Virus record (IMG/VR): IMGVR_UViG_3300042473_001265
Coordinates: 124,001-188,000 of that record
DNA: 64,000 nucleotides
Direction: 5' to 3' (one strand)
Below are positions 3,243 through 27,201 of the stretch, one piece after another (the first letter of the stretch is position 1; each line of letters starts with the position of its first letter). A model generated the notes under the pieces. That model was not told the origin of the DNA. It saw only the letters and a program-made list of their open reading frames with translations, and did no database searches. Made by a program: the position numbers and the translations under genes.

Positions 3243-3247
3243 AGCGT

Positions 3248-10996: not shown

Positions 10997-11785
10997 TCAC
11001 TGCACCACTGGCAATTCTGTTGTGTCACTGATATGATTGTACATTAGATCTTTTACTGTATCTAATCTCTTTGATTTGTTTTCTGAACCCAAAACTATCA
11101 CTGCAAATATCTGCTTGTTTCTTTCTACTAGCAAGGCCACGCACCAGCCGGCTGGATTGGTAAAGCCTGTTTTACTGACCTGTATGTTGTCAAAATCAAA
11201 CAACAATGGCTGATTGGTATTGGGTAAAGAGATTACTCGAATGCGTTTTTTAAAATGCGATTCAATTTGAATCTGTCGTTGCACACTGATTTCTCGAACT
11301 AGCACATATGTGCCAGCAGCCGTTACCAAAGTACCCATGTCTCCTGCGGTACCCAAATTGTTTCGACTTAGGCCCGACGGATCTTGAAAGCTGGTGCTGG
11401 TCATGCCCAATGCTGCTGCACGACGATTCATAGCACGAATAAATGCTGTTCGTCCACCAGGATAGTCTTGTGCCAATGTTTCTGCTGCTGCATTGTCGCT
11501 GCGAACCAGCATGGCATCAAACAACTGGCGGCGTGTGTATAGACCAGCTGGTAAATTGCTGCCTACACGATTGCTAAGTTTTACACTGCGACTCAGCACA
11601 GGATCGTGGTCCAGGGCCACTATTGCTGTCATCAGTTTGGTAATAGATGCAATGGGCCTAACACGGTTGGCCTGTTGATTTAGCACAATGGTGTCTTGAG
11701 TTTGATTGTAGACCCAGACACTGGTGGCAGCATTTGCCCAGCCAGTGGCCGCAAGTACTAATGCTGTTATAAACGGTAGTTTCAT
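10997..11785 (-). CDS. D-alanyl-D-alanine carboxy/endopeptidase (peptidase S11, PBP5/PBP7-like), with signal peptide
   Basis: ASITK (SxxK), SDN (SxN), KTG triad; hydrophobic leader ending ..ANA. Confidence 0.92.
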   Translation of the reverse strand: MKLPFITALVLAATGWANAATSVWVYNQTQDTIVLNQQANRVRPIASITKLMTAIVALDHDPVLSRSVKLSNRVGSNLPAGLYTRRQLFDAMLVRSDNAAAETLAQDYPGGRTAFIRAMNRRAAALGMTSTSFQDPSGLSRNNLGTAGDMGTLVTAAGTYVLVREISVQRQIQIESHFKKRIRVISLPNTNQPLLFDFDNIQVSKTGFTNPAGWCVALLVERNKQIFAVIVLGSENKSKRLDTVKDLMYNHISDTTELPVVQ

Positions 11786-11793: not shown

Positions 11794-12342
11794 TTAAGAA
11801 AACCGCCAGTAACTTGAAACTCTAATGGTGCCCTCTGGCACTGGATTAAACATGGCATGCCACAGCAGCGGCTGACTGCCGTCAGCAGCCAAGTGATTAA
11901 GCATGATATAGCCCGAATTGGGCCGGCTTAGAAATTGATACAGTAGGTTCTCTGGGTGTTTGTAACGATAAAATCCAGTGCCATATGCCTCGCTGGGCAC
12001 TGTCCAGTACAACTGCATGCTGTTAGGTACATGTCCGTCGGTGTGCATTGCAACATCAAATCCAGGAACATCTATCCAGAAGTGGCCACCCATTGATTTA
12101 AACTCTGTGCCCAGTGCAGTATTAATTTCAGGCAAGCAATGATTGATGTATCTGCTGTAACGCTGAGCAGTGACGTCGTCCCAATTGACTTGCCGACGAG
12201 GCCAAGACTCTTGTCCGCTGCTTAAACTGGTGGACACGGCGGACCAGTCTGTGCTGACTATTTCATCTGCTTGTTCTTGGGGCAGCAAGTCGTCGACTTG
12301 CCAAAGTCTGGCACGATCATCAACTTGTGTAAATTTGGCCAT
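11794..12342 (-). CDS. 2OG-Fe(II) oxygenase-like protein
   Basis: HTD (HxD), distal H (WHAM), RVS (RxS) in DSBH-like spacing. Confidence 0.7.
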   Translation of the reverse strand: MAKFTQVDDRARLWQVDDLLPQEQADEIVSTDWSAVSTSLSSGQESWPRRQVNWDDVTAQRYSRYINHCLPEINTALGTEFKSMGGHFWIDVPGFDVAMHTDGHVPNSMQLYWTVPSEAYGTGFYRYKHPENLLYQFLSRPNSGYIMLNHLAADGSQPLLWHAMFNPVPEGTIRVSSYWRFS

Positions 12343-13856
12343 TATGAATGGACCTTTACTCCGTACAATTGTTCAAATCGATCAGCGTCGGCACGATCAT
12401 TAACAACAGGCTCTCCGCGTATGTTAAGACTGGTGTTCAGCAGCATGGGACAGCCGGTCATTACAAACCACTTTTCCAAGAGTTCTCTAATGCCTGAACC
12501 ATCCGCAGGAACTGTCTGCACTCTACTAGTGCCGTCATGATGCACAATAGCAGGAAAAAGCTCAGGATACCAGCAGTTGGCGACTGCTTGCATATACCTA
12601 CTATGGCTGAAACCCCTAGGCATATCAAAATACTGATCAGCGTATTCTTCAAGGATAACTGGTGCAAATGGTCTGAATTTTTGTCTGCGTTTGATCTCAT
12701 TTACTCGATCCTTTATTTCCGGGCCGCGAGGGTCTGCTAGTAAACTCCTATTGCCTAACGCACGTGGGCCGAACTCGGCGCGTCCCGACGCCACGCCCAC
12801 AATACCATGCTGCAATAGATGATCCAGCAGCTGATTAACAGGATATTTACCACCAATGCTATCGCCCAAATAAGCGTCAGTCCAATCAATGCGACCACCG
12901 TAAGCCAACGCTGCGGCGCCAAGACTGCTGCCACCATCGCCTGGGCAGGGCATGATCCAAATATTGTCAAAATAATTTCCAATCCGTTGGTTGGCACTAC
13001 AGTTAAGGGCAACACCACCCATGTACACTAGATTGTTGCTCCAGTTGAATTGTTTTGCACGAAACATTACATTCAAAATAAGGTCTTCTGCTAGAGCCTG
13101 TGCCCCGGCAGCAATATCAAACTCTGAATAATCATTTAGATATTCAGCTGCCAGACCTGTGTGCAGATTATCTTTGAAACGAATTTCATATTCATTGTCG
13201 ACGAGATCGTAGCGCATTCGATTGCTGATATTGTTTTGTCCATATGCAGCCATGCCCATCAGGATGTATTCTTCGTCCAAGGGTCGTAGACCCACACGAG
13301 CTGTGACTGCGCTGTAAAACAAACCTATGCTGTGCGGATACCCGCGGGACCAAAGTTTTTGATAAGTTGCTCGACCCGAAGAATTGTATTCAGCACCCCA
13401 GATGGTTATAGTATCTAGTTCTCCAACAGCATCTATCACAACCACCGTGGCTCGATCATAGGGGCTGGTCTGGAATCCGGCGGCGGCGTGGGCAATATGG
13501 TGTCCTGTGTAACTGTGTCTAGCATGTAATAAAGCACTGAGATGTGGGCCAGCAGATAGATGTTTACGGAGATACTGCCCAAGAGTAAAAGAATTAAGAT
13601 CCAATGCTTCATGATATTGTCCGGAATAAAGTTGTTGTATTTTTTTGACCCATGGACGTTCGTAATAAGCAACCTGGTCCGGTGTGCCGTGACGCAAGGC
13701 TGCTGCCACTAGTTCATCATTTAGGTGTGCGTCATTCTTGATCTTGCTATAGCGTTCTGCATGTCCAGCAAACAGCACAGATCCGCCGGAGTCAATCATG
13801 CTGACAGCAGCATCGTGGTAACCGGCGCTGATTCCCAAATACTTTTTTAATTTCAT
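12342..13856 (-). CDS. O-carbamoyltransferase (NodU/CmcH/TobZ family)
   Basis: HDAA, ERYSKIKND, HHIAHA, GGVALN, EFGPRALGNRS, FRPFAP, DGTSRVQTV, LNTSLN. Confidence 0.93.
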   Translation of the reverse strand: MKLKKYLGISAGYHDAAVSMIDSGGSVLFAGHAERYSKIKNDAHLNDELVAAALRHGTPDQVAYYERPWVKKIQQLYSGQYHEALDLNSFTLGQYLRKHLSAGPHLSALLHARHSYTGHHIAHAAAGFQTSPYDRATVVVIDAVGELDTITIWGAEYNSSGRATYQKLWSRGYPHSIGLFYSAVTARVGLRPLDEEYILMGMAAYGQNNISNRMRYDLVDNEYEIRFKDNLHTGLAAEYLNDYSEFDIAAGAQALAEDLILNVMFRAKQFNWSNNLVYMGGVALNCSANQRIGNYFDNIWIMPCPGDGGSSLGAAALAYGGRIDWTDAYLGDSIGGKYPVNQLLDHLLQHGIVGVASGRAEFGPRALGNRSLLADPRGPEIKDRVNEIKRRQKFRPFAPVILEEYADQYFDMPRGFSHSRYMQAVANCWYPELFPAIVHHDGTSRVQTVPADGSGIRELLEKWFVMTGCPMLLNTSLNIRGEPVVNDRADADRFEQLYGVKVHS

Positions 13857-13954
13857 TTGTAGATAAACGGATCTCGTTTACGAAGTTCTTTGAGTTTTTT
13901 ACGATAACGTATTTCTAAGCGAATACGGCTAATTAAATTTTTAATCCAGTTCAT
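13853..13954 (-). CDS. 33-aa basic peptide MNWIKNLISRIRLEIRYRKKLKELRKRDPFIYK
   Basis: Fills the intergenic gap exactly, with ATGA overlaps at both ends; not in ORF track. Confidence 0.8.
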   Translation of the reverse strand: MNWIKNLISRIRLEIRYRKKLKELRKRDPFIYK

Positions 13955-15054
13955 GGAGTTTTCCTTGATGAATAGTCATAGCCCGGGCGCATCATATCAA
14001 TTTGTTTTTGCTTGTAATCAGCGTCGGTCCAACAGTAATCAAATGTACTGACGACACCGTCTATTTCTATCTTGTATATATCCAAATGCGAACTCAGTAT
14101 ATCCCAAATAGCCTGATAATCAGTTGTGCCGAAACTTTGCTGTAACTGCACTTGTCCAATGGGCAGGTATCCTAAACTCAATGCTGAATCTTCGGGGTCG
14201 CGTCCATTGGCCTGCAACCACCGTTTAAATTCGTCTTGTTGATTGTTGTGCCACGGTTGATTGCCATTGTATACCACATCGTTGCCCCATTCTATGTCAA
14301 ACTCTCCGCTGTAGTATTTTAATTCTGTAATAGCTTCGCATACTGTTGCAGTAAGTTCCGGAGCATGTTCGTCACGAAACACTTCGAATAGTGTTTTGCC
14401 TATCTGTGCCCAGTGCATATAAACACCGCCCAACACACGGTCGTATCCGTTTGTTACAAAGCCCGATCTATGTGCAGGTTTTAGATTGTAACGAGCTGCT
14501 GCTAAGAATGTAGTAATTTGACTGGGGCGCAGCCAATAAGGCGTAGTGTTTGCTTTGCGCTGACTGAGAATCAGTGACTCCATTTCGTGACAGATATTGT
14601 TCAACTGTCTTATGGCATACTTGGTATCATAGTCGGCCCGTTGATAATAGTTGCTTAAATTGTTTACGGTACCTTGCAGCACTTCAAAGTGGTTGTGAAG
14701 CCTGTTCAACATGTCGTGGTTGACATGTTGTACAATTTTGTCAGGATTTTGTGACCATGGACCTGCTGTTGTAACCGTAGCAGGCGAGTATGTTTCTTTA
14801 ATTTTGTAGTCATCAAAGAAGTTGTTTACTACACTGGCCGCTTGGTTGACTTCGTTGCACAGGTAATCAAGTGTGCGAGCTGTTTTGGAAAATCCCATAA
14901 AACAAAAGTTTTTTTCCAACAGGTTGCCAGACTGTAGCAGTGTTTTGAGAGCAGGTATCCAATCTTGTGCCAATTCATTGTCTGCGGGCAGTATGGTATA
15001 GTCAACCTGATCGCTATGTTTCAACGGATTGCGTAGTACAATTTTAACAGTCAA
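13951..15054 (-). CDS. Hypothetical protein (367 aa) in modification operon
   Basis: ORF track; TTG start overlapping the previous gene; LHNHFE and NNICHEME His/Glu motifs. Confidence 0.75.
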   Translation of the reverse strand: MTVKIVLRNPLKHSDQVDYTILPADNELAQDWIPALKTLLQSGNLLEKNFCFMGFSKTARTLDYLCNEVNQAASVVNNFFDDYKIKETYSPATVTTAGPWSQNPDKIVQHVNHDMLNRLHNHFEVLQGTVNNLSNYYQRADYDTKYAIRQLNNICHEMESLILSQRKANTTPYWLRPSQITTFLAAARYNLKPAHRSGFVTNGYDRVLGGVYMHWAQIGKTLFEVFRDEHAPELTATVCEAITELKYYSGEFDIEWGNDVVYNGNQPWHNNQQDEFKRWLQANGRDPEDSALSLGYLPIGQVQLQQSFGTTDYQAIWDILSSHLDIYKIEIDGVVSTFDYCWTDADYKQKQIDMMRPGYDYSSRKTP

Positions 15055-16336
15055 TTTGATTCCACCATGTTAACACATCAGGTCGGCTGGCCAGTATGTC
15101 GGCCATTGTAAATTTATCTTCACGAATTTGTTCTAGTTTTAACACACGCTGCTTGCCTCGAACAAGTCCTGCTTGCCAGGTGTCGGGCCATTGTTCTTCA
15201 AAGGTTGGGCGGGTTTTTAATTGTACCAGGATTGCTTGCACAGCTCCAGAACAAGAGGCTATCAATTCATCCAGCCACGGGTCAAGCAGGTGCCGCGGCA
15301 GAGCCAATGGGCTCATCACAATGTCAGGAGAAAACGCAAATACCACTTTTGCTAAGATATCGGTGTCTGTTTGTTGTGCAAGTTGCACAATGTTTTCAAT
15401 TTCAAACATTCCTGGCAAGGTGAGAGTAAAGTCGATTCTGACCTGGCGTCTGTGAGTTCTTGCTGCAACTGCTCTATCGTAATTTTTGCGCCAGCCAGCA
15501 TAGTCAAGGCCTGTTCTAATATATTCGCCAATGCGTTGTGTACCATCGAGACTCGCACAGATTTGCCAATCACGAAGGCCATGTAGAATCCCATCAAAGA
15601 GATCAATGCCACGATAATTAATTCTCGAAAGGTTAGTATTATATCTCGCATAGACTTTATGTCCATCTCCAAGTTCAACAATGCGTTTCATATAGCGCCA
15701 ATGTTGTTCGTACATCAAGGGTTCGCCACCAACCCAATACACTTCTTCAACGCGGTGTTCTTCAACTGCCTGCGCAAATTCTGCTTCGATTTGTTGATCT
15801 TGAAACTGAGAGATATCCTTTCTGACAGCAGGTTGCATCCAATTGTTCTTTGAATTGGACCAATCAATCATGTTGTGTTGGCGCTGTTCGCTTTCCCATG
15901 CACTGCTCAACATGTCACCGCATGTACGACATTTGAAATTGCACAGGTTACTGAATCTGTAGTCCCAACTCACTGGCAGCATGCTGGTGCTGCCGTCTGC
16001 ATCAGTGGTTTCCCAAATGCTATCATACTTATGTTTGAACATACTCCAGAAATAGCTGCGGTAAACATCGGTGTTTAGAAGTTTGCTGTTGCATACATCA
16101 CATTCTGGCAGTGTTTCTCCGGCCATCATACGGCGACGCACACTCCGCATGTGTTCACTGTTCCAGTGTTGATCCAGTGTGATGGGAGTATATTTGCCTG
16201 AGCCGGCGGCTGTGTCAATGTACTGTGTGAAACTTTGTGCAGGCTCACGGCTGGCACAGCACATTCTGCGTTCAGTTTGTGGACTCAGGTAGGTGTGAGT
16301 CCACGGCGCCATGCAAAGTGTTTCAGGCTTTGACAT
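15044..16336 (-). CDS. Radical SAM protein with N-terminal twitch (half-SPASM) domain
   Basis: CMAPW..RMCC..CDVC N-terminal; CNFKCRTC; GGEP; YNTN. Confidence 0.9.
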   Translation of the reverse strand: MSKPETLCMAPWTHTYLSPQTERRMCCASREPAQSFTQYIDTAAGSGKYTPITLDQHWNSEHMRSVRRRMMAGETLPECDVCNSKLLNTDVYRSYFWSMFKHKYDSIWETTDADGSTSMLPVSWDYRFSNLCNFKCRTCGDMLSSAWESEQRQHNMIDWSNSKNNWMQPAVRKDISQFQDQQIEAEFAQAVEEHRVEEVYWVGGEPLMYEQHWRYMKRIVELGDGHKVYARYNTNLSRINYRGIDLFDGILHGLRDWQICASLDGTQRIGEYIRTGLDYAGWRKNYDRAVAARTHRRQVRIDFTLTLPGMFEIENIVQLAQQTDTDILAKVVFAFSPDIVMSPLALPRHLLDPWLDELIASCSGAVQAILVQLKTRPTFEEQWPDTWQAGLVRGKQRVLKLEQIREDKFTMADILASRPDVLTWWNQIDC

Positions 16337-17537
16337 AGTCAATCAATGCTGCAAACTCCGGCTCTACATCTGCTAGATTTTGTTGTCGTTTACGGTCAAG
16401 ATCAAGGATATTCATTCGTAGCAATTGTCCATCCAAACTGTTGCCACGATTCATAAATTCTGCGGCACTGACAAATTCTGACAGTATGTTAGCAGGAACA
16501 TCAGCCCGGGTCAATTGTTTTGTAATCGCTGTTTTGGCTGATTCAGGCAGGGTACTGATGCTGAAGTAATAGGCATCATGCATCATGTTCCAGTATATAA
16601 AATCAAACTTTTGCTGTATTAACCATTGGGCCACTGTTTCAAGATAATACACATTGAACACATTGATGGTACAACAGGCCTGCAATGTAATGTTGCTGTT
16701 GCGACTGCGTAGTTGTCTAAAGCGTTCTGTATTTGCAACCACATCGGCCCAGACGGCATTGCTGCGCTGATATTCGAATCGGTGTTCAACATCGTCAATG
16801 CTTAGTGCAATTTCAACATGTTTGAAATGTTTCCAAATTGCTTCGCCTTCTTCGGGGTACTGTGTGCCATTGGTGTTGTAGTGTATTTCAACTTGTGCAG
16901 CGCGACCTGTGTCTACTAATTTTTGTAACAGTTGGAAATGTTCCTTGATCATGAACGGTTCACCACCAGTGAACTCAATGTAACGAATGTTGTCTAGATG
17001 TTGATCTAGATCCGTCCAAAATTCAGCACTTTCTCTTGGCCAGGCACCGTCTTTCAACATCTGATAAGCAAAGCTACTGCGAGTTTCTTCTGCACGATTG
17101 AACCGAATTTCTTCTGCTGCAAACTGGCTGCTGCTCCAAGATCCACATATGCGGCATTTTAGATTGCAAATGTTGCCCAGTTTGAGATCAAGAAACATCA
17201 AGGGCATTGCATCTGCTGTCCACGACACATTGGAATCGAGCAGGTGTTTGAGTCTGTCTAGTGTATGCATGCGCTTGCTGGTACGCCCGGCTCGCTCTTC
17301 ATTCCAGCAGCGGCGACAGTTTTGTGGTTTTTTGCCAGCAAGAAAATCTTCGCGCAGCGTTCGCATTGCTCGGCTATTTTGTATTTCCGTCAAGCTGGTG
17401 TTGGCCAACTTGTATTTGTTGCCGTCGTTGTCTTCAATCTCGTCAATGGCCAAACAACAAGGTCGTACTGTTCCCACTGGACTTGCTTCCAAGCTGATCC
17501 AAGGTAGTACACAAAAAGTATCATGGGGTATGTTCAT
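16323..17537 (-). CDS. Radical SAM protein with N-terminal twitch domain
   Basis: FCVLPW..RPCC..CRRCW; CNLKCRIC; GGEP; YNTNG. Confidence 0.9.
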   Translation of the reverse strand: MNIPHDTFCVLPWISLEASPVGTVRPCCLAIDEIEDNDGNKYKLANTSLTEIQNSRAMRTLREDFLAGKKPQNCRRCWNEERAGRTSKRMHTLDRLKHLLDSNVSWTADAMPLMFLDLKLGNICNLKCRICGSWSSSQFAAEEIRFNRAEETRSSFAYQMLKDGAWPRESAEFWTDLDQHLDNIRYIEFTGGEPFMIKEHFQLLQKLVDTGRAAQVEIHYNTNGTQYPEEGEAIWKHFKHVEIALSIDDVEHRFEYQRSNAVWADVVANTERFRQLRSRNSNITLQACCTINVFNVYYLETVAQWLIQQKFDFIYWNMMHDAYYFSISTLPESAKTAITKQLTRADVPANILSEFVSAAEFMNRGNSLDGQLLRMNILDLDRKRQQNLADVEPEFAALIDYVKA

Positions 17538-18853
17538 TTGATAGGAATCCTGGTATCAGGCCGACGAAATTCTATAATGGATTCAAGTTCTGGTACTACA
17601 CCAAGCAATGATTCACTGCGAGACCAATCCAGATCATTTACTGAATCCCAAAAATCTTTCAACAAGTGTGAATTGTCTGTGGCCATCATAAATGCTATGG
17701 CGCCTTCAAATCCGCCCACAGCTCGTTGTATCTGATCAATAGGACGCAGATATTCAATGTGTTCTTCAAACTGCTGTTTAAATTTTAATTTAAGGTGCAT
17801 CGGCAACATGTCTATACGATAATCCTGCGGCCCTTGTAAAATATTCAGATTGAAGTCTTGTGCTTTGATGAACCCAGAATCGATCATGTAACGGTGGAAT
17901 TTAACAAAGTTCCATATGTTCATCATACTCAGTGTGGGACTGATCATAAAATCTATATGCGGGCACTCGCGTTTTAGATCCCGTATATTTTGTTCTACCT
18001 GGGCCCAATCAGTTCCAGATCGTATAACTTCGGCCCGCTCGGCCATGTCATCCAGGCTGGCGGCCACACACACATTGGGAAAATGTTTCCATAGTTCCAG
18101 CACTGATTCTTTTTTATATCGCAGGTCGTTTAGATTGGTATTGTAAATCAGCCGCACTTCGGTGTTGCCTTTTTCTATCAGCAATTTTAAGATGCGATTG
18201 TGTTCTTCCATGATCAATGGTTCGCCACCGGCAAAATAAATTTGTTCCAAATGCGGAATATGTTCTTGCATTTGCTCCCACACATCCTCCTCGTGCTGGC
18301 CTGCAAATTGCACTCGCGGTCGTAATGGTTTCCCCCACAGCTTAACATCGTCGTCGTACCAGCGACTGCTAAAAATACTGCCACAACTGCGACATTTGAG
18401 CTGACACATGTTGCTAAATCTCACATCCCAATAATGCAACCGCATGTCGGGCAAGCTACCATCTGGCAAAGTTTGATCTATTTCGTCGATGTAATGTCCA
18501 AAATTCTTATTGCTGTTATTTCTCATGCTGGCAAATCCAGCGCCTTCCTGTTCGTAACAGTCGCCACACTGTTTACAAGATTTATCCGCCAACATATTGC
18601 GCCGCATTTCACGCATGGGCTCGTCGTTCCATATTTCCCGCATGGTGTTTTCTTTGAGATTTCCCACTGGATGTTCGGCTTTGCCTAAACAGCAAGGATA
18701 TGCTCGACCGTCCGGCCATGCATGCAGATGTATCCAGGGAATCATGCAAAACACTTCCGACTCAATCAATTTATGCTGCTGATCCTTTGTTATATCTTCT
18801 AGTTTTATGTAGGATGGAATGCGGTCTTTCCAATTGTAGTTGCTAAGACTCAT
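17534..18853 (-). CDS. Radical SAM protein with N-terminal twitch domain
   Basis: FCMIPW..YPCC..CGDCY; CQLKCRSC; GGEP; ATGA-coupled start. Confidence 0.9.
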   Translation of the reverse strand: MSLSNYNWKDRIPSYIKLEDITKDQQHKLIESEVFCMIPWIHLHAWPDGRAYPCCLGKAEHPVGNLKENTMREIWNDEPMREMRRNMLADKSCKQCGDCYEQEGAGFASMRNNSNKNFGHYIDEIDQTLPDGSLPDMRLHYWDVRFSNMCQLKCRSCGSIFSSRWYDDDVKLWGKPLRPRVQFAGQHEEDVWEQMQEHIPHLEQIYFAGGEPLIMEEHNRILKLLIEKGNTEVRLIYNTNLNDLRYKKESVLELWKHFPNVCVAASLDDMAERAEVIRSGTDWAQVEQNIRDLKRECPHIDFMISPTLSMMNIWNFVKFHRYMIDSGFIKAQDFNLNILQGPQDYRIDMLPMHLKLKFKQQFEEHIEYLRPIDQIQRAVGGFEGAIAFMMATDNSHLLKDFWDSVNDLDWSRSESLLGVVPELESIIEFRRPDTRIPIK

Positions 18854-20187
18854 AATGATTGATACCATTCTTTTAGGTTAGGAAATGTGTTGCTAAAGTT
18901 TTTGTTCCTGCGCACATCATATTGATCAAAGAACTGGCGAAAGTCGTTGTGTAACTTGGGCATGTCAAATGTGTCGCTGTGTGGAGTTTTAACAATTTTC
19001 AAATAGTCAATCAATCTGCGAACATGATTCAGTTCAAATTCTTGACATGCTGATCTATTGTCAACTGATTCTTCCCACATGATCAAACAATTGCGAGCAG
19101 AGGACAACAAGGCAGGTGATAATACCAACGGAGATTGAAAACTTGGAAAGCGTAATATATTTAGTGTAAAATTAACTCGTTGTGTTCCGTAGGCTTTTTT
19201 TAATTTTATCAACTGTGTTAGGAATTCGGGCAATGTTTCTAAACACAATGCATTGATTGTACACATCACATGCACAGCACGAATATGATCGTGCTCCAAC
19301 AATTCTTGAACATTGTGCATCCATAGATCATAGTCCAAGCCGTCTCTTATGTATTCAGCAGCCGAGCCTGTTGCTTCGCAACTGGTGTATATCTCTAGGT
19401 GTGGGATATCTTGAACTCGTTCAATGAACTCCTGTAGCTTGATGCGATCCATGCCCAGATTTGAATTGATTGCTAGACGAGTTTGACTGCGACCTTGATT
19501 TGTTTTGAACCAGTCAATCAGCTTCCAGGTCTCACCGCTCATCAAGGGTTCGCCGCCGGTGATTCTCAGCTCTTGTAGTGTTCGGTGGAGGTCTGATTCC
19601 CACCAAGCAAAGAACGCTTCAACATATGGATTCGTCTCACCAAAGCGGTATAGTTGACTGCTATCGTGAGTGTGAGTAAAGTGGTTGCGCCCATCAGACA
19701 CCAAATTGGCATAGCCGCCGTGCTTTCGAATGTCATTGACCCATGTGCTACTGAAAGCAGGGTTACAATAGCTACAAGCAAATTGGCAAGTGCGGTCGAA
19801 CGCAATTTCAAGTGTGCGAAGATTGACGTCTTCATTGTACGGAGTTTGGTAAGCTTCATCAAGTGCCTTTATAGGGTAAATTTTACTTTTGTATACACGG
19901 TCGCTGACAGCATCAGTGGCCATGTCTTCGATCTTCCAGCAGTATTCACAACCGGCAGGGCGATCACCTGCCAGCATCTTCTTGCGATCATCTTTTTTCT
20001 TTGCTGTGTTATGCAGTGCAGCCGGATTGGTTTTTAGTTCTTCGAGATCAACAGCATGTGCTGGTGGATGATGACAACTGGTTGTTTGCCCGGAACCCAA
20101 CCATATAGTGGCATTGTACCATTTGGCTGCACAGAAACTAGCACTTTTGGTATCCAAGACCTGGTGCTTGAAATCTAGATCATTCAT
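18850..20187 (-). CDS. Radical SAM protein with N-terminal twitch-like domain (SCHH subtype)
   Basis: FCAAKW..SCHH..CEYCW; CQFACSYC; GGEP. Confidence 0.9.
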   Translation of the reverse strand: MNDLDFKHQVLDTKSASFCAAKWYNATIWLGSGQTTSCHHPPAHAVDLEELKTNPAALHNTAKKKDDRKKMLAGDRPAGCEYCWKIEDMATDAVSDRVYKSKIYPIKALDEAYQTPYNEDVNLRTLEIAFDRTCQFACSYCNPAFSSTWVNDIRKHGGYANLVSDGRNHFTHTHDSSQLYRFGETNPYVEAFFAWWESDLHRTLQELRITGGEPLMSGETWKLIDWFKTNQGRSQTRLAINSNLGMDRIKLQEFIERVQDIPHLEIYTSCEATGSAAEYIRDGLDYDLWMHNVQELLEHDHIRAVHVMCTINALCLETLPEFLTQLIKLKKAYGTQRVNFTLNILRFPSFQSPLVLSPALLSSARNCLIMWEESVDNRSACQEFELNHVRRLIDYLKIVKTPHSDTFDMPKLHNDFRQFFDQYDVRRNKNFSNTFPNLKEWYQSL

Positions 20188-21286
20188 TGAAATGTTTGTT
20201 TATAAATTGTTTAAAGCGGGCCGGAAATTCAGATCGAACTCGAGTTCGCATTTCCGCAAGATGTTGCTGGTTGTATTTACATACATTATAGCATTCTTTT
20301 AAGAAACTTGCAAGGTCTTGTTGACATAAATCTTTAACCACACGACTCACTTGCACCATTCTATCTTGATTGTTTGCTATTTCATCAAACCTCTCGTCAA
20401 TCACATGTCCGAATGTTTGAAATCCTAGATTATGCATATCTCTATAATATCCCTGATTGGCAACCGCAATCCATGGATGTCCAATTGCAATGGGTTTCCA
20501 TATTTTCTCTGTTCTAAAACTGTAGCGATAGTTTTGAACAGTTTCGGTCACCAAGCTAAAATAAGTATTGGTATACTGTGCCGGAACTAGATACACGTCT
20601 CCCCATATGTCAGACTCGAACAAATATTTTTTTACATTTTCATCAGTCTGAGATATGTCAACATTGAACCGATCAAGTTCGTATTGCCGATCGAGCAATT
20701 TCACCGGGCCATTGGCAGGATCTAAATTGCTCCATAATGCTGTATCAAGTACGTCGGCTAACTGTTCAATCATAAATTTTCTATGCTGTCTTCCTTTTCC
20801 GTTCAAAAATAAAAATTTATATGGTCGATTGGTTGAATAGGTGCGTTTATAAGTTTTTATAGCGTTGATATTTTCATCGTAGTCTAGTATTTTAGGAAGA
20901 AAATTTTCATATACAAGATGCAGATATTGTGCCGGAACATCGCCGCCGGTTAATAATAGTATTTTTCCTTTTTTGAGTAACTCAAGTAGATCAGTATTTT
21001 CATTTCCATTGGCCAGTTTAGTACGAAATTCTGGCCGGCCGCAACGATTTATTAAAGTTGCCGATCCTTCACTTGGTTCAGCATATATAGCTTTTATAGT
21101 ATTAGTTTTTACCAACTCTACAATTTTTTCAAAATTTTCTCCAAACTCAGCGTGACTTATCAAATATATAGCATTGGGAACCAAAGTGTGTTCTTGAAAA
21201 ATAGAAAATTTATCGTCGGCATACACAGCAAGTTCATCGTGTATTCCACATCCTGTGTCTATTATTAATTTACGATTGCCGAGCAT
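20180..21286 (-). CDS. Putative glycosyltransferase (GT10-like TEK motif)
   Basis: LVTETV..RTEKIWKPI..HPWI..GFQTF..DERFD; visibly more AT-rich than neighbours. Confidence 0.5.
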   Translation of the reverse strand: MLGNRKLIIDTGCGIHDELAVYADDKFSIFQEHTLVPNAIYLISHAEFGENFEKIVELVKTNTIKAIYAEPSEGSATLINRCGRPEFRTKLANGNENTDLLELLKKGKILLLTGGDVPAQYLHLVYENFLPKILDYDENINAIKTYKRTYSTNRPYKFLFLNGKGRQHRKFMIEQLADVLDTALWSNLDPANGPVKLLDRQYELDRFNVDISQTDENVKKYLFESDIWGDVYLVPAQYTNTYFSLVTETVQNYRYSFRTEKIWKPIAIGHPWIAVANQGYYRDMHNLGFQTFGHVIDERFDEIANNQDRMVQVSRVVKDLCQQDLASFLKECYNVCKYNQQHLAEMRTRVRSEFPARFKQFINKHFNE

Positions 21287-22694
21287 GGTACTCACATTCC
21301 TTCCACCAGGCACTCATTTCTGGAAACACGCTCAAGAAGTCTGTACCGTGTCTGTGATCTGCTTCTGTAAAGAACCGATAGAAGTCAGCTTTATTTCGTT
21401 GCAGGTACGCAGAGTCTAATCGTTGTCCATCACGCATCCAGGCTATGTCGCGATCAAGACGAGATATTTCATAATCTTTGAAACCGTGCAATCTGGTTGC
21501 TTCTGTTTCGATACCGTGTTGCATTGATATTTTTAATTTTTCCAACTGTGCTGCATAGCTTTCTGGCAACAATTGTAAACTTTGCCAAGCGGGTTGTCGC
21601 AGCACTGGAGTATCAAACCACACACGCTGATATGTGCTGCTGTGTTTTTTTCTAAGTTCTATAATGCCATCTAACAGCTCGGGTAAACTTGTCACACTTA
21701 GGTTATTCATTGTCACAATAAATGTCACACTGTTGCGCGAAGGAACTTCGGTTAAGAACTGATTTACTCTGCTCCACACCAAATCAAAATTCATGCCATG
21801 GCGCATGTACTCGGCCTGACGGCCCCATCCGTCTAGACTGATGTATTGCATAAAGTGCTCAACCACTCCTTCTTGGCACAATTGTTTGGTGTAGGCCAAA
21901 TAGCGTTGCCAACTTTTTTCATCCACACTGAAGTTGCTGGTTACATTGAGATGCAGATTAGATTTGGGATTGGCCAGCACATAGTCAAACACACGATAGG
22001 TATTCCGATCCAGCAATGGTTCGCCGCCGGTCATTCTGAAGTGCTCCAACTCGGGATACAAGGTGGGCCACCACTGCCAAAACGCTTCCACATAGGGATT
22101 GTGCTCACGAACAGGAATGGATTTACGGTCACCTGCAAAGTGCTCAGGCGCATTGTGCGGGATGGATGTAGGATAAGCACCGTGCCGATCAGTTTCTTGT
22201 TGCCAGGTGCTGCTGAACTGTGGGCTACAATAGCTGCAAGCAAGGTTACAAGCGTTGTTGAAATTTACTTCAACATAACTGGGAGTAATGTCAGCGTCCC
22301 ACTCTGCATTCACAATGGTGCCAAAGTCTTTGGCAGCCCACGGTTCTCCTGATCTGTAATGTCGGTCACTGAGTTTGCCATTGTCTTCCATTGTCCAACA
22401 GTAGCTGCATTCAGCAGGACGTGTGCCCTCTAGCATTTGTTTACGCTGTTGTTTTTTATAATCAGTGTTGTGTAATGCAGCAGGATTGCGACCAATGGCA
22501 TCTACAGGAATACGATGCAAGGGCGGGTGGTAACAACTGTTGTTAAGGCCAGTGGTCAGGTGTAGACTGACTTGTTTCCATTTGGCCAGACACATGCTGG
22601 GACTAACAGTATCTAACTGTTGTTTGATTAGTTCGGCATCACTTAAAAACTTTGATTTAAAGTCTTCGTTGACTTCGTCACCTTTGTTTTGCAT
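21270..22694 (-). CDS. Radical SAM protein with N-terminal twitch-like domain (SCYH subtype)
   Basis: MCLAKW..SCYH..CSYCW; CNLACSYC; GGEP. Confidence 0.9.
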   Translation of the reverse strand: MQNKGDEVNEDFKSKFLSDAELIKQQLDTVSPSMCLAKWKQVSLHLTTGLNNSCYHPPLHRIPVDAIGRNPAALHNTDYKKQQRKQMLEGTRPAECSYCWTMEDNGKLSDRHYRSGEPWAAKDFGTIVNAEWDADITPSYVEVNFNNACNLACSYCSPQFSSTWQQETDRHGAYPTSIPHNAPEHFAGDRKSIPVREHNPYVEAFWQWWPTLYPELEHFRMTGGEPLLDRNTYRVFDYVLANPKSNLHLNVTSNFSVDEKSWQRYLAYTKQLCQEGVVEHFMQYISLDGWGRQAEYMRHGMNFDLVWSRVNQFLTEVPSRNSVTFIVTMNNLSVTSLPELLDGIIELRKKHSSTYQRVWFDTPVLRQPAWQSLQLLPESYAAQLEKLKISMQHGIETEATRLHGFKDYEISRLDRDIAWMRDGQRLDSAYLQRNKADFYRFFTEADHRHGTDFLSVFPEMSAWWKECEYHARQS

Positions 22695-23621
22695 TCACCA
22701 ACCTTCTTGACTACGAATAACATCAATCTCTCTCACAGCGACACCGCGATTGTGCCAGTTACTGCGATAATGATGTTTAAAGAATTTACTAGCAGACTCA
22801 TCAATCCATACCATTGGTAAATCCAACTGCGTAGTCAATTCGTTTGCTACTCGGCTCAACACCACTTCCGGGTCAGTGTCTTTTACTGTGTCCCACAGTT
22901 GTTCCAGCGCAGCAAAATCTTGTACTGCGCGATGGTCCCAGTTGGTCAGCATGGTCATGTATGAACCCATGCGCGATCCAGCCATACTCCAAATGCCGTG
23001 TTCAGCATCGCGACCCACATTGTGCCATATGGTCAAGTTGTCGAGATTGCGTTGATGCACACGATTTTGAAACTCTGCCACTGTGGGTTTCTTACCTGTG
23101 TTCAAACACATTTTGACCCCTTCGCGAAACCCGGCACGCCATGCGTGAAAAGCTGAACCATTGGGATATGTGGTTGAATAGCAATCATGCATGGCCCAGT
23201 ACAACGGATCAAAGCAAAACTCCACTTCGGTTGCTGCACGACCGTCGGTGGCTTCGTGTGTTCGCATATCGTTGACAAACTTTCTAGTCCACGAACTCAG
23301 CCCGCCGTTGCCATACATCAATCCGTTTATGTGATTACGGGCACGCCAGCGGAACACTGCGGATTCCCATTGTGCATCAGGCAACTCCAGTGTCTGGTTA
23401 AAAAATTCAGGGTCTGGCATGTTGTCGCCGTCGATCAACACAAAGCGTTCGGTATCACTGGCCGCAGCAGCAGCTTTGTGTGCTGCATCACTGCCCCGAA
23501 CACCATCCACTCGCTTGGCCCAAGGAACCATATTGCGAATCTTTATCCAGAATTCTTCTTTTTGTGGTTCATCATAAGTTAGATAAATGCAGTCAAGGTC
23601 TGCGATGTCAATCCGATTCAT
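22695..23621 (-). CDS. Glycosyltransferase-like protein (GT-A fold)
   Basis: IYLTYDEP, RVDGVRGSDAAHKAAA, LIDGDN (DxD), NGLMYGNGG, WRAGFREGVKM. Confidence 0.65.
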   Translation of the reverse strand: MNRIDIADLDCIYLTYDEPQKEEFWIKIRNMVPWAKRVDGVRGSDAAHKAAAAASDTERFVLIDGDNMPDPEFFNQTLELPDAQWESAVFRWRARNHINGLMYGNGGLSSWTRKFVNDMRTHEATDGRAATEVEFCFDPLYWAMHDCYSTTYPNGSAFHAWRAGFREGVKMCLNTGKKPTVAEFQNRVHQRNLDNLTIWHNVGRDAEHGIWSMAGSRMGSYMTMLTNWDHRAVQDFAALEQLWDTVKDTDPEVVLSRVANELTTQLDLPMVWIDESASKFFKHHYRSNWHNRGVAVREIDVIRSQEGW

Positions 23622-23955
23622 GTGATTTTAAACTCCATTTTGTATGTGGTTGTTGCGGATCAACAACAATGCTGATGTTGCTGGGTACGCAAGGTGTACC
23701 GGTTGAGCCGGGTACTAGTTTGGTAACTGTTTTCTTTGGCACTATGTGTACAAGTTTTCCTTCAATGACCTGCACACGATGTGAGCTCAGTCGATATGTT
23801 TCAGCATCTATGTCTATGTAATTACCTGGCTGGTGTTCCATGCTGTAAGATACCGGGCGACCATGTTCGTCGTAGTACAGCCTAAAAAACACAGGCGCAG
23901 GTTCTGGCACAGGTTCTGCCCAGGCCTTCCAAAAATTTTCTTCAGTTTCATTCAC
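23608..23955 (-). CDS. Hypothetical protein
   Basis: ORF track frame; start uncertain (GTG 23955 or ATG 23973). Confidence 0.6.
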   Translation of the reverse strand: MNETEENFWKAWAEPVPEPAPVFFRLYYDEHGRPVSYSMEHQPGNYIDIDAETYRLSSHRVQVIEGKLVHIVPKKTVTKLVPGSTGTPCVPSNISIVVDPQQPHTKWSLKSHESD

Positions 23956-24229
23956 GGTCCGGGGCCAATCCATTGCTGTGTTTATGAGCCGCTGTGTCGA
24001 CATCTTGATCAAATCGTTTCACTTGCACAGGGTCAATACCCAGTACTTTGGCGTAGGAGCACAACAAACATTTGGGATTGCCACAATCCATGGCATGCTG
24101 TTTTGCAAACTTGTGTGGTTGACTGACATCCGATCCTTTGGATTTTGCAATCCGGGTCTGCTTCTTTACAGCGTTTTCATCTTTGAGCAGTCGTTTGCTG
24201 TGTTTGATTTTGTCTTGTTCAGTACTCAT
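23948..24229 (-). CDS. Basic hypothetical protein with H..CGNPKCLLC putative Zn-binding motif
   Basis: GGAG RBS and ATGA overlap at 24226-24229. Confidence 0.7.
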   Translation of the reverse strand: MSTEQDKIKHSKRLLKDENAVKKQTRIAKSKGSDVSQPHKFAKQHAMDCGNPKCLLCSYAKVLGIDPVQVKRFDQDVDTAAHKHSNGLAPDRE

Positions 24230-24969
24230 GTCAATCTCCAGTCTTTCATATGATAATGCACAAATCCCCACTGTGCTATGGTGTTTATACGCACACCCGG
24301 ATTGGTATTTTCCCATACCAATTCTTTGGTCCAGTCGTTAGTGTGGGTGGCAACAATGCCTGGTTTCATATGCACCATAGTGGGTCCATATCCCAGGGGC
24401 AAGGTCACTTGTTCTCTGCCTGTGATTTCTACTGCCATTGCATAAACAACATCAGTTGACGGAACTTCTTCGGGAAATTTCAACAGTGTTTTAAAGTTGT
24501 CCCAGTTTTCAAAAATACTCCTGACCAATTGAAAAAAGTCCTGTGCTGTTTTACTTACACGCCAATATGTAATAGCATTATAAACATCAGGCAACTTGTT
24601 CACATCAAACAATTTTCTGTAACGACGATTGCTACCAGGTTGATCGTAAAAGTCTCTACATCCCTGACTGATCACAACATCACGATGTTCAAACATGGTC
24701 CACCAGTGATTCACTGGACTGGCTGCAATCATATCTGCTTCCAGTTTGATAGTTTGCCTGTAAGGGCTGGCAGCAAACACTTGCCAGTCGTTGGCAAAGC
24801 CACCGCGATCGCCGTAGGGCAACATTTCTTTTGTCAATACAGTTATGTTGGCATCAGGATGCCATGCTCGTATGCTGTCGGCCAACTGGTTGGCGCAGGC
24901 CACATAGTCCACTGTGTCTGTGTTTACAGCTGGGATTAGGTATCCGCGCTCAGCAAGGATTTTCAACAA
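24226..24969 (-). CDS. Glycosyltransferase-like protein (GT-A, GT8-like)
   Basis: SPYRQTIKLEAD, STDVVYA, VHMKP; paralog of 24950-25753. Confidence 0.6.
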   Translation of the reverse strand: MLKILAERGYLIPAVNTDTVDYVACANQLADSIRAWHPDANITVLTKEMLPYGDRGGFANDWQVFAASPYRQTIKLEADMIAASPVNHWWTMFEHRDVVISQGCRDFYDQPGSNRRYRKLFDVNKLPDVYNAITYWRVSKTAQDFFQLVRSIFENWDNFKTLLKFPEEVPSTDVVYAMAVEITGREQVTLPLGYGPTMVHMKPGIVATHTNDWTKELVWENTNPGVRINTIAQWGFVHYHMKDWRLT

Positions 24970-27126: not shown

Positions 27127-27201
27127 TTTTGTTTCCCTTTGTATTAGTTGATCAATTTCAACGCAATCTTCGATTGCTGGGTGATATTAACCTGTGTTAT
27201 T

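What the first reader, a model, noticed from the sequence alone, without database searches (positions are those of the whole stretch)
15044..22694. Tandem array of five inverted-architecture (N-terminal twitch) radical SAM genes; eight radical SAM genes in the window
Seen: each gene has the auxiliary Fe-S twitch cysteines (C..[PK]W..C[CHY]..CxxC) before the CxxxCxxC core, the reverse of the usual rSAM-SPASM order. There are two subtypes: CC-type with CxxKCRxC (15044, 16323, 17534, 57645) and SC[HY]H-type with CxxACSYC (18850, 21270). Known: an N-terminal-twitch rSAM family exists, mostly from uncultured sources, with unknown function. Inference: the diverged paralogs perform sequential or site-specific radical steps on one substrate class, at a large Fe-S cost to the host.
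Basis: partly seen in the sequence, partly recalled or inferred. Interest (0 to 1): 0.78.

Follow-up and report, generated by a model that had tools for sequence, protein, structure and literature searches.

The report
Jumbo-phage radical SAM glycan operon
A 340-kb environmental jumbo phage carries five old, strictly conserved "inverted" radical SAM enzymes inside an operon of sugar-transferring enzymes next to its tail-fibre genes, and their bacterial relatives sit in O-antigen gene clusters, so they most likely perform radical chemistry on a sugar chain rather than on a peptide.

Summary
The five minus-strand ORFs at 15044-22694 all exceed the curated cut-off of NCBIfam NF033640 (N-terminal twitch radical SAM). 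The two cysteine subtypes are as described. The window holds eight radical SAM genes and the 340-kb phage genome holds about sixteen. The array is interrupted once by a non-radical-SAM ORF (20180-21313).

The copies are not recent duplicates. They are 21-33% identical to each other, yet each has its own ortholog (45-86% identity) in the same order in 80 related environmental phage contigs. They are under strong purifying selection, and the twitch and core cysteines are invariant.

They lie in one tightly packed operon of about 15 kb, directly downstream of the fibre genes. The operon also holds two GT8-like transferases, a GT-A-fold protein, a candidate GT-B transferase and a NodU/TobZ-type carbamoyltransferase. 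Relatives add an NDP-sugar dehydratase, SGNH-like proteins and a B12 radical SAM.

In cellular genomes the family is rare. Where present it sits beside glycosyltransferases. In one case four tandem copies lie in an ABC-transporter O-antigen cluster, one of them fused to Wzt.

The conserved 33-aa ORF tracks the carbamoyltransferase, not the radical SAM genes.

Best reading: radical tailoring of a carbohydrate, probably a virion-linked glycan. The chemistry and the target are untested.

The parts
21270..22694 (-). rS5: N_Twi radical SAM, SC[HY]H subtype (474 aa)
   Evidence: NF033640 322 bits. Own ortholog clade, support 97, sister to rS4. C35, C54, C96, C99 and C149/153/156 invariant in 67 orthologs. 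A 35%-identical ortholog sits next to a u308 homolog in Ralstonia phage RsoM2USA.
20180..21313 (-). u377: non-radical-SAM ORF that interrupts the array; candidate glycosyltransferase (a lead only)
   Evidence: No Pfam or NCBIfam hit. Atlas structure matches phage proteins fused to GDP_Man_Dehyd/Epimerase or to an MTS methyltransferase; the nearest named feature clusters are GT10 at score 0.80. Conserved ETVFE..Y..RTEK block. Profile search against PDB was negative. Present in only part of the related loci.
18850..20187 (-). rS4: N_Twi radical SAM, SC[HY]H subtype (445 aa)
   Evidence: NF033640 303 bits. Clade support 99. Twitch and core cysteines invariant in 68 orthologs. A 51%-identical ortholog lies beside the micro-ORF and carbamoyltransferase in RsoM2USA.
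17534..18868 (-). rS3: N_Twi radical SAM, CC subtype (444 aa); the best-conserved copy
   Evidence: NF033640 401 bits. More than 6,500 homologs, the top 120 all at 79% identity or more. Clade support 100.
16323..17537 (-). rS2: N_Twi radical SAM, CC subtype (404 aa)
   Evidence: NF033640 346 bits. Clade support 99, and that clade also holds the window gene 57552-59135.
15044..16342 (-). rS1: N_Twi radical SAM, CC subtype (432 aa)
   Evidence: NF033640 279 bits. Orthologs are 67-79% identical even in the distant loci. Clade support 91.
13951..15054 (-). u367: conserved protein of unknown fold, always directly after rS1
   Evidence: Present after rS1 in nearly all loci. Model pLDDT 87. No PDB match. 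Only uncharacterised AlphaFold DB relatives.
13853..13954 (-). pep33: conserved 33-aa micro-ORF MNWIKNLISRIRLEIRYRKKLKELRKRDPFIYK, with ATGA overlaps on both sides
   Evidence: Read from the sequence. Among 53 distinct versions, W3, L13, E14, Y17, R18, L21, L24, D28, P29, F30 and Y32 are invariant. pN/pS is 0.03-0.3. Linked to the carbamoyltransferase rather than to the array. An unannotated copy exists in RsoM2USA.
12342..13856 (-). CarbT: NodU/TobZ-type carbamoyltransferase (504 aa)
   Evidence: Carbam_trans_N 8.7e-34 and Carbam_trans_C 2.1e-46. NodU 1.1e-37, below the equivalog cut-off. Orthologs are 51-71% identical across the loci.
11794..12342 (-). u182: unknown ORF at the operon tail; not a core gene
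   Evidence: No family hit. Found in only a few loci.
10997..11785 (-). S11 D-Ala-D-Ala carboxy/endopeptidase (PbpG-like), last gene on this strand; not a core gene
   Evidence: Peptidase_S11 1e-36. Nearest cellular relatives are Beta/Gammaproteobacteria at 33-40% identity. Seen beside the module in only one other locus, L168.
22695..23621 (-). u308: GT-A / nucleotide-diphospho-sugar-transferase-fold protein directly upstream of rS5
   Evidence: 58-80% identical across the loci. Invariant D64-G65-D66-N67 after a beta strand. All top fold matches are GT-A glycosyltransferases or sugar nucleotidyltransferases, but Z is only 6-8 and Foldseek E is 0.01 or worse.
23608..24012 (-). u134: small conserved unknown ORF
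   Evidence: Syntenic in most loci. No family hit.
23948..24229 (-). Small Cys-containing ORF of about 93 aa; its ATG at 24229 overlaps the u247 stop (ATGA)
   Evidence: Read from the sequence. ORFs of 87-95 aa occupy this position in several of the closer related loci.
24226..24969 (-). u247: GT8-like (glycogenin-like) glycosyltransferase
   Evidence: A profile of 20 orthologs hits about 18 glycogenin chains at E 0.002-0.04 over the N-terminal 110 residues. phrog_1903. Paralog of u279.
24950..25789 (-). u279: GT8 / Nucleotid_trans-like glycosyltransferase, paralog of u247
   Evidence: Atlas places it in a 'nucleotide-diphospho-sugar transferase' cluster at 0.99. The model of that top hit (not of u279 itself) aligns to a bacterial PF03407/PF01501 cluster at TM 0.62-0.70. 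hhalign against u247: 99.3% probability, E 3.7e-20.
25750..26058 (-). u102: small conserved ORF, probably the first gene of the operon
   Evidence: Syntenic in the loci. A terminator-like hairpin at 26111-26092 and a promoter-like site at 26094-26066 lie just upstream, but those scans are not above chance overall.
26134..28482 (-). u330 and fib426: fibre-like genes always directly upstream of the operon
   Evidence: fib426 hits virion-protein phrogs and, weakly, the Peptidase_G2 intramolecular chaperone domain. Both are syntenic in the loci. Counterparts lie next to the GT/rS5 block in RsoM2USA.
29279..47139 (-). Giant 4,815-aa virion protein and the baseplate wedge protein upstream (context)
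   Evidence: phrog_10646 baseplate wedge, 8.8e-279. The wedge protein is 34% identical to those of Atu_ph07, 121Q and similar phages. The giant protein's N-terminus matches virion structural proteins of PA5oct, Atu_ph07 and cyanophages.
57552..59135 (+). Sixth N_Twi radical SAM in the window (527 aa, CC subtype, with a long N-terminal extension)
   Evidence: SPASM 2e-10 N-terminal of Radical_SAM 6.5e-14. NF033640 293 bits. Groups with the rS2 clade, support 99.
62604..63572 (+). Radical SAM gene without an N-terminal twitch (CxxxCxxC at residue 17)
   Evidence: PF04055 34 bits. Only 29 bits to NF033640. Motif position.
63565..64000 (+). Start of an eighth radical SAM gene (N_Twi), cut by the window end; the full gene is G000 187565-188836
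   Evidence: NF033640 244 bits. PF04055 43.5 bits.

Best explanation
The five genes are five different, ancient N-terminal-twitch radical SAM enzymes. They form the tailoring core of a phage glycan operon (about 26058 to 10997, minus strand) placed directly behind the tail-fibre genes.

Proposed mechanism. The glycosyltransferase-like proteins (u279 and u247, GT8-like; u308, GT-A fold; possibly u377) build a sugar chain from host or phage nucleotide sugars. Each radical SAM enzyme reductively cleaves SAM at its CxxxCxxC cluster and abstracts a hydrogen atom from one particular sugar position. The N-terminal twitch cluster serves as electron conduit or substrate anchor. The outcome is a distinct change at each position, such as oxidation, epimerisation, deoxygenation, or C-C or C-methyl chemistry. 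The NodU/TobZ-type enzyme then O-carbamoylates a hydroxyl group. I think the product is most likely a heavily modified glycan on the phage's own fibre or baseplate proteins. The alternative is a remodelled host envelope glycan.

Shown: family membership; conservation, synteny and selection; glycosyltransferase and carbamoyltransferase neighbours; the glycan-cluster context of the cellular homologs.

Inferred: that the substrate is a carbohydrate, the chemistry of each step, Fe-S binding by the twitch cysteines, and the target of the glycan.
For: Family and motifs. Non-redundant ancient paralogs under purifying selection.

Operon neighbours are sugar enzymes. u247 hits glycogenin/GT8. u279 is GT8/Nucleotid_trans-like and a paralog of u247. 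u308 has a GT-A fold with an invariant DGD motif. The u377 fold occurs fused to an NDP-sugar dehydratase or to a methyltransferase in other phages. The carbamoyltransferase is of the NodU/TobZ type.

Accessory genes inserted between the same core genes in relatives are sugar-tailoring types: an NDP-sugar 4,6-dehydratase/epimerase at 1.6e-48, a B12 radical SAM, SGNH/DUF6071-like proteins and a weak sulfotransferase match.

Cellular homologs. In a Zetaproteobacteria MAG, four tandem N_Twi genes lie between rmlC-rmlD-wzm and TylF-type and other methyltransferases plus a WbsX glycosyltransferase. One is fused as ABC_tran-Wzt_C-twitch-radical SAM. The contig also carries dnaE and accA, and an independent gene call shows the same fusion. 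Other homologs sit beside a GT2 and an NDP-sugar epimerase at a prophage edge, beside a GT2 with or without a GT1-like gene, and beside RbsD/FucU and an aldo-keto reductase.

Link to fibres. fib426 and u330 are always directly upstream. In RsoM2USA, where the module is split, the GT block with rS5 stays next to the fibre-like genes. The phage genome has no initiating phosphoglycosyl transferase and no ABC-2 exporter.

No RiPP signature. The only candidate peptide has no cysteine and tracks the carbamoyltransferase. Published context: glycosyltransferases and radical SAM cassettes lie in the 'host recognition cluster' of pelagimyophages (PMC7029224).
Against: No member of NF033640 has a known reaction or a solved structure. 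All functional inference is guilt by association.

The glycosyltransferase calls are weak to moderate: u308 has Z 6-8 and Foldseek E of 0.01 or worse; u247 has E 0.002; u377 is only a lead. u367 and several small ORFs remain unexplained.

Other N_Twi copies in this genome lie next to terminase, UvsX and primase/helicase genes, not sugar genes. The family may therefore not have a single substrate class.

The cellular examples are few and come from two or three lineages. Nothing shows that virion proteins are glycosylated. Expression timing is unknown, and the promoter and terminator scans are at chance level.
Confidence: 0.5

Rival explanations
1. Host-envelope remodelling. The same glycan chemistry acts on the host's lipid-linked O-antigen, capsule or LPS during infection. 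This could block superinfection or stop progeny adsorbing to debris. The virion is not the target.
For: The clearest cellular homologs act in an ABC-transporter O-antigen pathway, and one is fused to Wzt. One homolog sits with a GT2 and an epimerase at a prophage edge, resembling a serotype-conversion cassette. The pelagimyophage paper interprets its GT8 genes this way (PMC7029224).
Against: The phage encodes no initiating transferase and no exporter. The core enzymes are conserved across phages from many different samples, whereas host surface glycans vary. The operon is tightly linked to fibre genes. None of this is decisive.
Confidence: 0.2
2. Peptide or protein maturases (RiPP-like). The radical SAM enzymes cross-link, epimerise or otherwise modify the 33-aa peptide or the virion fibre proteins themselves.
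For: SPASM/twitch radical SAM enzymes are the mainstay of RiPP maturation (PMC11002830). A strongly conserved 33-aa ORF with W, Y, F and K residues lies in the operon. There are weak NCBIfam similarities to peptide maturases. An S11 peptidase closes the operon in this genome.
Against: The peptide motif occurs in at least 120 viral stretches. Most hold a carbamoyltransferase, and only about a quarter hold any array gene. The peptide has no cysteine, its C-terminus is invariant, and its N-terminus is variable. No RiPP recognition element or PqqD-like match was found. The neighbours and the cellular contexts are sugar enzymes, not proteases or transporters. The S11 peptidase is not a core gene. 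The complex prediction gave no answer.
Confidence: 0.12
3. DNA hypermodification. The radical SAM enzymes, transferases and carbamoyltransferase decorate phage DNA bases with modified sugars or carbamoyl groups to evade restriction.
For: From my own knowledge, radical SAM enzymes and glycosyltransferases take part in known phage DNA hypermodification pathways. Other N_Twi copies in this genome lie beside replication and packaging genes.
Against: The operon lies in the structural (fibre) module on the structural strand. The cellular homologs are in O-antigen clusters. I did not search the genome for a base hydroxymethylase or a DNA glycosyltransferase family, so this is not excluded.
Confidence: 0.08
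4. A diffusible small molecule, either aminoglycoside-like or a nucleotide analogue, is made during infection for competition or counter-defence.
For: From my own knowledge, twitch radical SAM enzymes (BtrN, AprD4) and a TobZ-type carbamoyltransferase occur together in aminoglycoside pathways. There are weak NCBIfam similarities to viperin and MoaA.
Against: Those similarities are far below the cut-offs and are generic to the radical SAM core. No aminotransferase, inosose synthase or export gene was seen in the module. The strict linkage to fibre genes would be unexplained.
Confidence: 0.05

Closest known systems
NCBIfam NF033640 (N_Twi_rSAM, twitch domain-containing radical SAM protein)
   Same: All five genes, and five more in the genome, exceed the curated cut-off. 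They share the N-terminal Cys-rich twitch region, CxxxCxxC and GGEP.
   Different: The family is a sequence definition with no assigned reaction. Added here: a conserved five-paralog operon in jumbo phages, the glycosyltransferase context, and O-antigen-cluster homologs.
Carbohydrate-tailoring radical SAM enzymes with an auxiliary cluster (BtrN, AprD4, BlsE, NeoN; from my own knowledge)
   Same: The logic is the same: a radical SAM core plus one auxiliary cluster acts on sugar C-H bonds, within pathways that also hold glycosyltransferases and a TobZ-type carbamoyltransferase.
   Different: The domain order is reversed, with the twitch N-terminal. There is no significant sequence match (BlsE E 0.001, far below its cut-off; no PDB relative). 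The resemblance is in how they work, not in family membership.
Host recognition cluster of pelagi- and cyanomyophages, and the marine T4-like genome with 12 radical SAM genes (PMC7029224; PMC5332604)
   Same: Glycosyltransferases (GT8 prominent) and radical SAM cassettes lie after a giant baseplate protein and the tail fibres. Phage-encoded Fe-S carriers accompany many radical SAM genes.
   Different: Those regions are described as hypervariable and the radical SAM cassettes as add-ons. Here the five genes and their order form a conserved core in a different clade of Rak2/Atu_ph07-like jumbo phages, with variable inserts between them.
Zetaproteobacterial ABC-transporter O-antigen cluster with four tandem N_Twi genes
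   Same: The protein family is the same, the genes are tandem paralogs, and they sit together with sugar methyltransferases and a glycosyltransferase.
   Different: The bacterial copies are recent duplicates of one another, forming one clade. One is fused to Wzt, and an exporter is present. The phage has no exporter.
SPASM/twitch RiPP maturases (PqqE, MftC, sactisynthases, cyclophane synthases)
   Same: A radical SAM core with an auxiliary-cluster domain, and a small conserved ORF nearby.
   Different: In those enzymes the auxiliary domain is C-terminal and a recognition element is N-terminal. Here the order is reversed, no recognition element was detected, and the small ORF tracks the carbamoyltransferase.
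Ralstonia phage RsoM2USA (MG752970), the only deposited phage with the cassette
   Same: gp354-gp349 correspond to u102, u279, u247, u134, u308 and an rS5 ortholog, next to fibre-like genes. gp202 is an rS4 ortholog lying near a ...DPFIYK micro-ORF and the carbamoyltransferase gp199.
   Different: Only the two SC[HY]H-type enzymes are present and the module is split into two loci. All of these genes are annotated as hypothetical.

Membership tests
NF033640 N_Twi_rSAM | Whole-protein score above the curated cut-off (170 bits) over nearly the full 398-position model | tested here: met
   279, 346, 401, 303 and 322 bits, each covering about positions 1-2 to 388-398 of the model. Confirmed on the genome.
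NF033640 N_Twi_rSAM | Cys-rich twitch/SPASM-like region placed N-terminal of the CxxxCxxC radical SAM core | tested here: met
   The Pfam SPASM match lies before the Radical_SAM match in three of the five copies. Cysteine positions. These cysteines are invariant in 60-68 orthologs per copy.
Radical SAM superfamily | CxxxCxxC cluster motif and a GGEP-type SAM-binding motif | tested here: met
   the three core cysteines and G214-G215-E216-P217 are invariant across 12 paralogs.
Radical SAM superfamily / twitch enzymes | Binding of two [4Fe-4S] clusters and reductive cleavage of SAM | not testable with these tools
   Only conservation of the ligand cysteines is available.
RiPP radical SAM maturases | A precursor peptide that co-occurs specifically with the maturase | tested here: not met
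   The 33-aa ORF motif occurs in at least 120 viral stretches. 101 of them hold the carbamoyltransferase and about 29 hold rS1/u367.
RiPP radical SAM maturases | A peptide-recognition element (PqqD-like RRE) in or beside the enzyme | tested here: inconclusive
   No Pfam or NCBIfam match to PqqD/RRE in any operon protein. Divergent elements could be missed, and u367 has an unknown fold.
Sugar-tailoring radical SAM enzymes (BtrN, BlsE, AprD4, DesII, NeoN) | Sequence membership in one of these characterised families | tested here: not met
   The best match is BlsE at E 0.0011, 18.5 bits against a cut-off of 400. The solved-structure search found no relative.
Sugar-tailoring radical SAM enzymes | Genomic association with nucleotide-sugar and glycosyltransferase genes | tested here: met
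   Phage operon. Cellular homologs.
Myophage host recognition cluster (PMC7029224) | Location after the giant baseplate protein and tail fibres, with glycosyltransferases and radical SAM cassettes | tested here: inconclusive
   The gene order fits. I did not show that the 4,815-aa protein is VrlC. This module is conserved rather than hypervariable, and the phage belongs to another clade.
NodU/CmcH/TobZ O-carbamoyltransferases (for 12342-13856) | Both the Carbam_trans_N (Kae1-like) and Carbam_trans_C (YrdC-like) domains | tested here: met
   8.7e-34 and 2.1e-46. The NodU equivalog cut-off is not reached (130 against 1000 bits), so the acceptor is unknown.

The most novel reading that the evidence does not exclude
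N-terminal-twitch radical SAM enzymes are a previously unrecognised class that edits assembled glycans, not free nucleotide sugars. A widespread clade of jumbo phages uses five of them in fixed order to build a heavily radical-tailored, carbamoylated glycan on its own tail fibres or baseplate. Bacteria use close relatives, one physically fused to the Wzt exporter, to edit O-antigen before export.
Probability: 0.25. Interest if true: 0.8.

Novelty: new variant of a known kind. Interest (0 to 1): 0.55.

Why it matters
The family has thousands of environmental members and no known reaction. This work gives it a testable substrate class (carbohydrates). It also provides a fixed five-enzyme pathway to dissect and a bacterial counterpart fused to an O-antigen exporter. 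A cultured phage, RsoM2USA, carries a two-enzyme mini-version for genetics.

If the glycan sits on the virion, this would be a much more elaborate case of phage self-glycosylation than those known so far. That would bear on host recognition and on how phages evade receptors, depolymerases or grazers. If the glycan is on the host envelope instead, it would be a new kind of infection-time surface remodelling.

The chemistry (five different radical steps on sugars) would interest enzymologists in either case.

Tried and rejected
- Megablast of the array against 50,697 phage records found no match.
- The T4 late promoter TATAAATA does not occur in the window. Sigma-70 promoter and terminator scans are at chance level, so nothing can be said about expression timing.
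- Profile searches against PDB sequences for u308, u367, u377 and u279 gave nothing usable. A single-sequence search for rS3 gave only a marginal hit to the tetraether synthase radical SAM core.
- The u367 model is confident but has no solved-structure match, and its Atlas search gave nothing.
- The complex prediction of pep33 with the carbamoyltransferase and u367 returned 'no answer'. It is evidence in neither direction.
- Literature searches for the peptide motif, for the family name, and for radical SAM with O-antigen/Wzt found nothing relevant.
- Recent tandem duplication is rejected. Pseudogenisation is rejected.
- The S11 peptidase as a pathway member is rejected because it is not conserved with the module.
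As a result, the plus-strand genes at 1-10984 and 60147-64000, and the phage's possible DNA-modification genes, were not scanned.

Full report
WHAT THE WINDOW IS. The window is bases 124001-188000 of a 340,172-bp IMG/VR virus record estimated to be 98% complete. The minus strand from about 56.5 kb down to 11 kb is a structural module. It runs through virion proteins, a baseplate hub (gp5-like), a baseplate wedge (phrog_10646, 8.8e-279), a 4,815-aa giant protein and fibre-like proteins. The wedge protein is about 34% identical to those of Atu_ph07, 121Q, Rak2-type and related jumbo myoviruses. The N-terminus of the giant protein matches virion structural proteins of PA5oct, Atu_ph07 and cyanomyoviruses. 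A gp55-like late sigma factor lies at 56642-57658. The finding therefore concerns a jumbo phage, not a cellular genome.

THE OBSERVATION. All exceed the curated cut-off of NCBIfam NF033640, at 279-401 bits against 170. Pfam puts a SPASM-type match before the Radical_SAM match in three of them. The cysteine patterns and the two subtypes (CC with CxxKCRxC; SC[HY]H with CxxACSYC) are as described. Eight Radical_SAM matches fall in the window and fifteen in the genome. One further copy is detected only by NF033640, and one is a B12-binding radical SAM. One correction is needed: a 377-aa ORF without radical SAM motifs (20180-21313) lies between the fourth and fifth copies.

AGE AND SELECTION. The paralogs in this genome are only 21-33% identical to each other. 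A scan of IMG/VR with the best-conserved copy returned 80 loci from contigs of up to 354 kb. In these, each of the five genes has its own ortholog at 43-86% identity, in the same order. In a maximum-likelihood tree each of rS1-rS5 is a separate clade (support 91-100). rS4 and rS5 are sisters (support 100). The plus-strand gene at 57552 groups with the rS2 clade (support 99). Synonymous sites are saturated (pS about 0.8), while pN is 0.09-0.25. All twitch and core cysteines are invariant in 60-68 distinct orthologs per gene, whereas other cysteines vary. These are therefore five old, functional, non-redundant enzymes.

THE OPERON. From about 26058 to 10997 the minus-strand genes abut or overlap, often by ATGA. 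The only candidate boundary is a hairpin plus a promoter-like site at 26.1 kb, and those scans are at chance level overall. The conserved gene order across the loci is: fib426, u330, u102, u279, u247, (u134), u308, rS5, (u377), rS4, rS3, rS2, rS1, u367, pep33, CarbT. Variable genes are inserted between the core genes.

The non-radical-SAM core genes point to sugars:
- A profile of u247 hits glycogenin (GT8) at E of about 0.002.
- u279 falls in a nucleotide-diphospho-sugar transferase cluster and is a paralog of u247 (hhalign 99.3%).
- u308 is 58-80% conserved. It has an invariant DGDN motif, and its model matches only GT-A glycosyltransferases and sugar nucleotidyltransferases, though at modest Z of 6-8.
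- The u377 fold recurs in phage proteins fused to a GDP-mannose-dehydratase-type epimerase or to a methyltransferase.
- CarbT has both domains of the NodU/TobZ O-carbamoyltransferases.
- The accessory inserts include a clear NDP-sugar 4,6-dehydratase/epimerase (1.6e-48), further radical SAM genes including a B12-binding one, SGNH/DUF6071-like proteins and a weak sulfotransferase match.
- u367 folds confidently (pLDDT 87) but has no solved relative.

CELLULAR RELATIVES. True family members are rare in cells: 2 of 401 sampled Pseudomonadota genomes.

One genome has four tandem copies inside an ABC-transporter O-antigen cluster. The NCBI name of an identical protein marks this genome as a Zetaproteobacteria MAG. 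The cluster runs rmlC, rmlD, wzm, then a single 854-aa ORF reading ABC_tran-Wzt_C-twitch-radical SAM, then three more copies, a TylF-type O-methyltransferase, another methyltransferase and a WbsX glycosyltransferase. The contig also carries dnaE and accA. An independent gene call on another assembly shows the same fusion.

The second genome has a copy beside a GT2 and an NDP-sugar epimerase at the edge of a prophage. Homologs in Rhodospirillales-type genomes sit beside a GT2, with or without a GT1-like gene. One more sits beside RbsD/FucU and an aldo-keto reductase. No cellular context resembled a RiPP cluster.

THE 33-AA ORF. It is real coding sequence. Its C-terminal residues are almost invariant in 53 distinct versions, and there are synonymous changes. 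Of these, 101 hold a carbamoyltransferase homolog, which follows the ORF in most stretches where gene order could be read. Only about 29 hold rS1/u367. The N-terminal half varies widely and is often hydrophobic. An unannotated copy (...RKQDPFIYK-stop) lies upstream of the carbamoyltransferase locus in Ralstonia phage RsoM2USA. The peptide is therefore a partner of the carbamoyltransferase. It could be a leader or arrest peptide, a small subunit, or a carbamoyl acceptor, and I cannot tell which. It is an unlikely substrate for the radical SAM array. The complex prediction gave no answer.

THE TARGET. Three things favour a virion-linked glycan. First, the invariable position directly behind the fibre genes. 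Second, the GT block with rS5 stays next to fibre-like genes in RsoM2USA even though the module is split there. Third, the phage encodes no initiating phosphoglycosyl transferase and no ABC-2 exporter. The O-antigen context of the bacterial homologs, and the interpretation given for pelagimyophage GT8 genes (PMC7029224), favour host-envelope remodelling. This question is open. I put roughly 0.3 on the virion, 0.2 on the host envelope, and about 0.6 on 'carbohydrate substrate' overall.

WHAT IS KNOWN. Many radical SAM genes together with Fe-S carrier genes have been noted in marine T4-like viral genomes (PMC5332604). Radical SAM cassettes and glycosyltransferases have been noted in the host recognition cluster of pelagimyophages (PMC7029224). 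In both cases no function was assigned. The present phage also encodes two IscA/HesB carriers, each beside a radical SAM gene. New here are four things: the fixed five-gene core in a jumbo-phage clade, its embedding in a glycosyltransferase-carbamoyltransferase operon, the O-antigen-cluster homologs including a Wzt fusion, and a cultured phage with a reduced version.

VERDICT. The family is already catalogued and similar cassettes have been noticed before, so I classify this as a new variant of a known kind, with moderate interest (0.55). The chemistry, Fe-S binding and the target are all untested.

Noticed in passing
window 13853-13954 (-); also L090-L209, and L210:11029-11136: A micro-ORF family of about 33-40 aa has a variable, often hydrophobic N-terminus and an invariant C-terminus [KR]xDPFIYK-stop. 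It usually lies just upstream of a NodU/TobZ-type carbamoyltransferase, often with an ATGA overlap. It occurs in at least 120 viral contigs and, unannotated, in Ralstonia phage RsoM2USA. Its function is unknown: arrest or leader peptide, small subunit, or carbamoyl acceptor.
   Followed up: partly
G000 23708-24004 and 283765-284067 (outside the window): Two phage-encoded A-type Fe-S carrier (IscA/HesB) genes. One lies near the radical SAM gene at 20891-22441. The other lies directly upstream of the B12-binding radical SAM gene at 284086-285714.
   Followed up: partly
G000 237067-248601, 274395-275438 and 20891-22441 (outside the window): Further N_Twi radical SAM paralogs are scattered between core genes (terminase, UvsX/RecA-like, primase/helicase). 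One pair flanks a truncated SDR/epimerase-like ORF (L003:16906-17445).
   Followed up: partly
L298 (G105:C19) 8579-11143 (-): A bacterial single ORF of 854 aa fuses the O-antigen ABC ATPase Wzt and its carbohydrate-binding Wzt_C domain to an N-terminal-twitch radical SAM enzyme. Three more tandem copies follow it. The same fusion was called independently in L302.
   Followed up: yes
window 29279-43726 (-): A 4,815-aa ORF with FG-GAP repeat matches. Its N-terminal 900 residues resemble virion structural proteins of PA5oct-, Atu_ph07- and cyanophage-type myoviruses. It is probably the giant baseplate or fibre protein.
   Followed up: partly
window 13951-15054 (-): u367 gives a confident model (pLDDT 87, pTM 0.85) with no match among solved structures and only uncharacterised AlphaFold DB relatives. 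It always follows rS1.
   Followed up: partly
window 10997-11785 (-): A PbpG-like S11 D-Ala-D-Ala endopeptidase closes the operon in this phage only. Its nearest cellular relatives are Beta/Gammaproteobacteria at 33-40% identity, which is a weak hint about the host.
   Followed up: partly
G000 286453-288036 (outside the window; L005:16453-18036): A pectate-lyase-like beta-helix protein, of tailspike or depolymerase type, lies two genes after the B12 radical SAM gene.
   Followed up: no
window 56642-57658 (+) and 57552-59135 (+): The gp55-like late sigma factor gene overlaps by about 100 bases the longest reading of the sixth N_Twi radical SAM gene. That gene has an N-terminal extension of about 150 aa which the other copies lack.
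   Followed up: no
window 59144-60157 (+): A calcineurin-like metallophosphoesterase lies directly after the sixth radical SAM gene.
   Followed up: no
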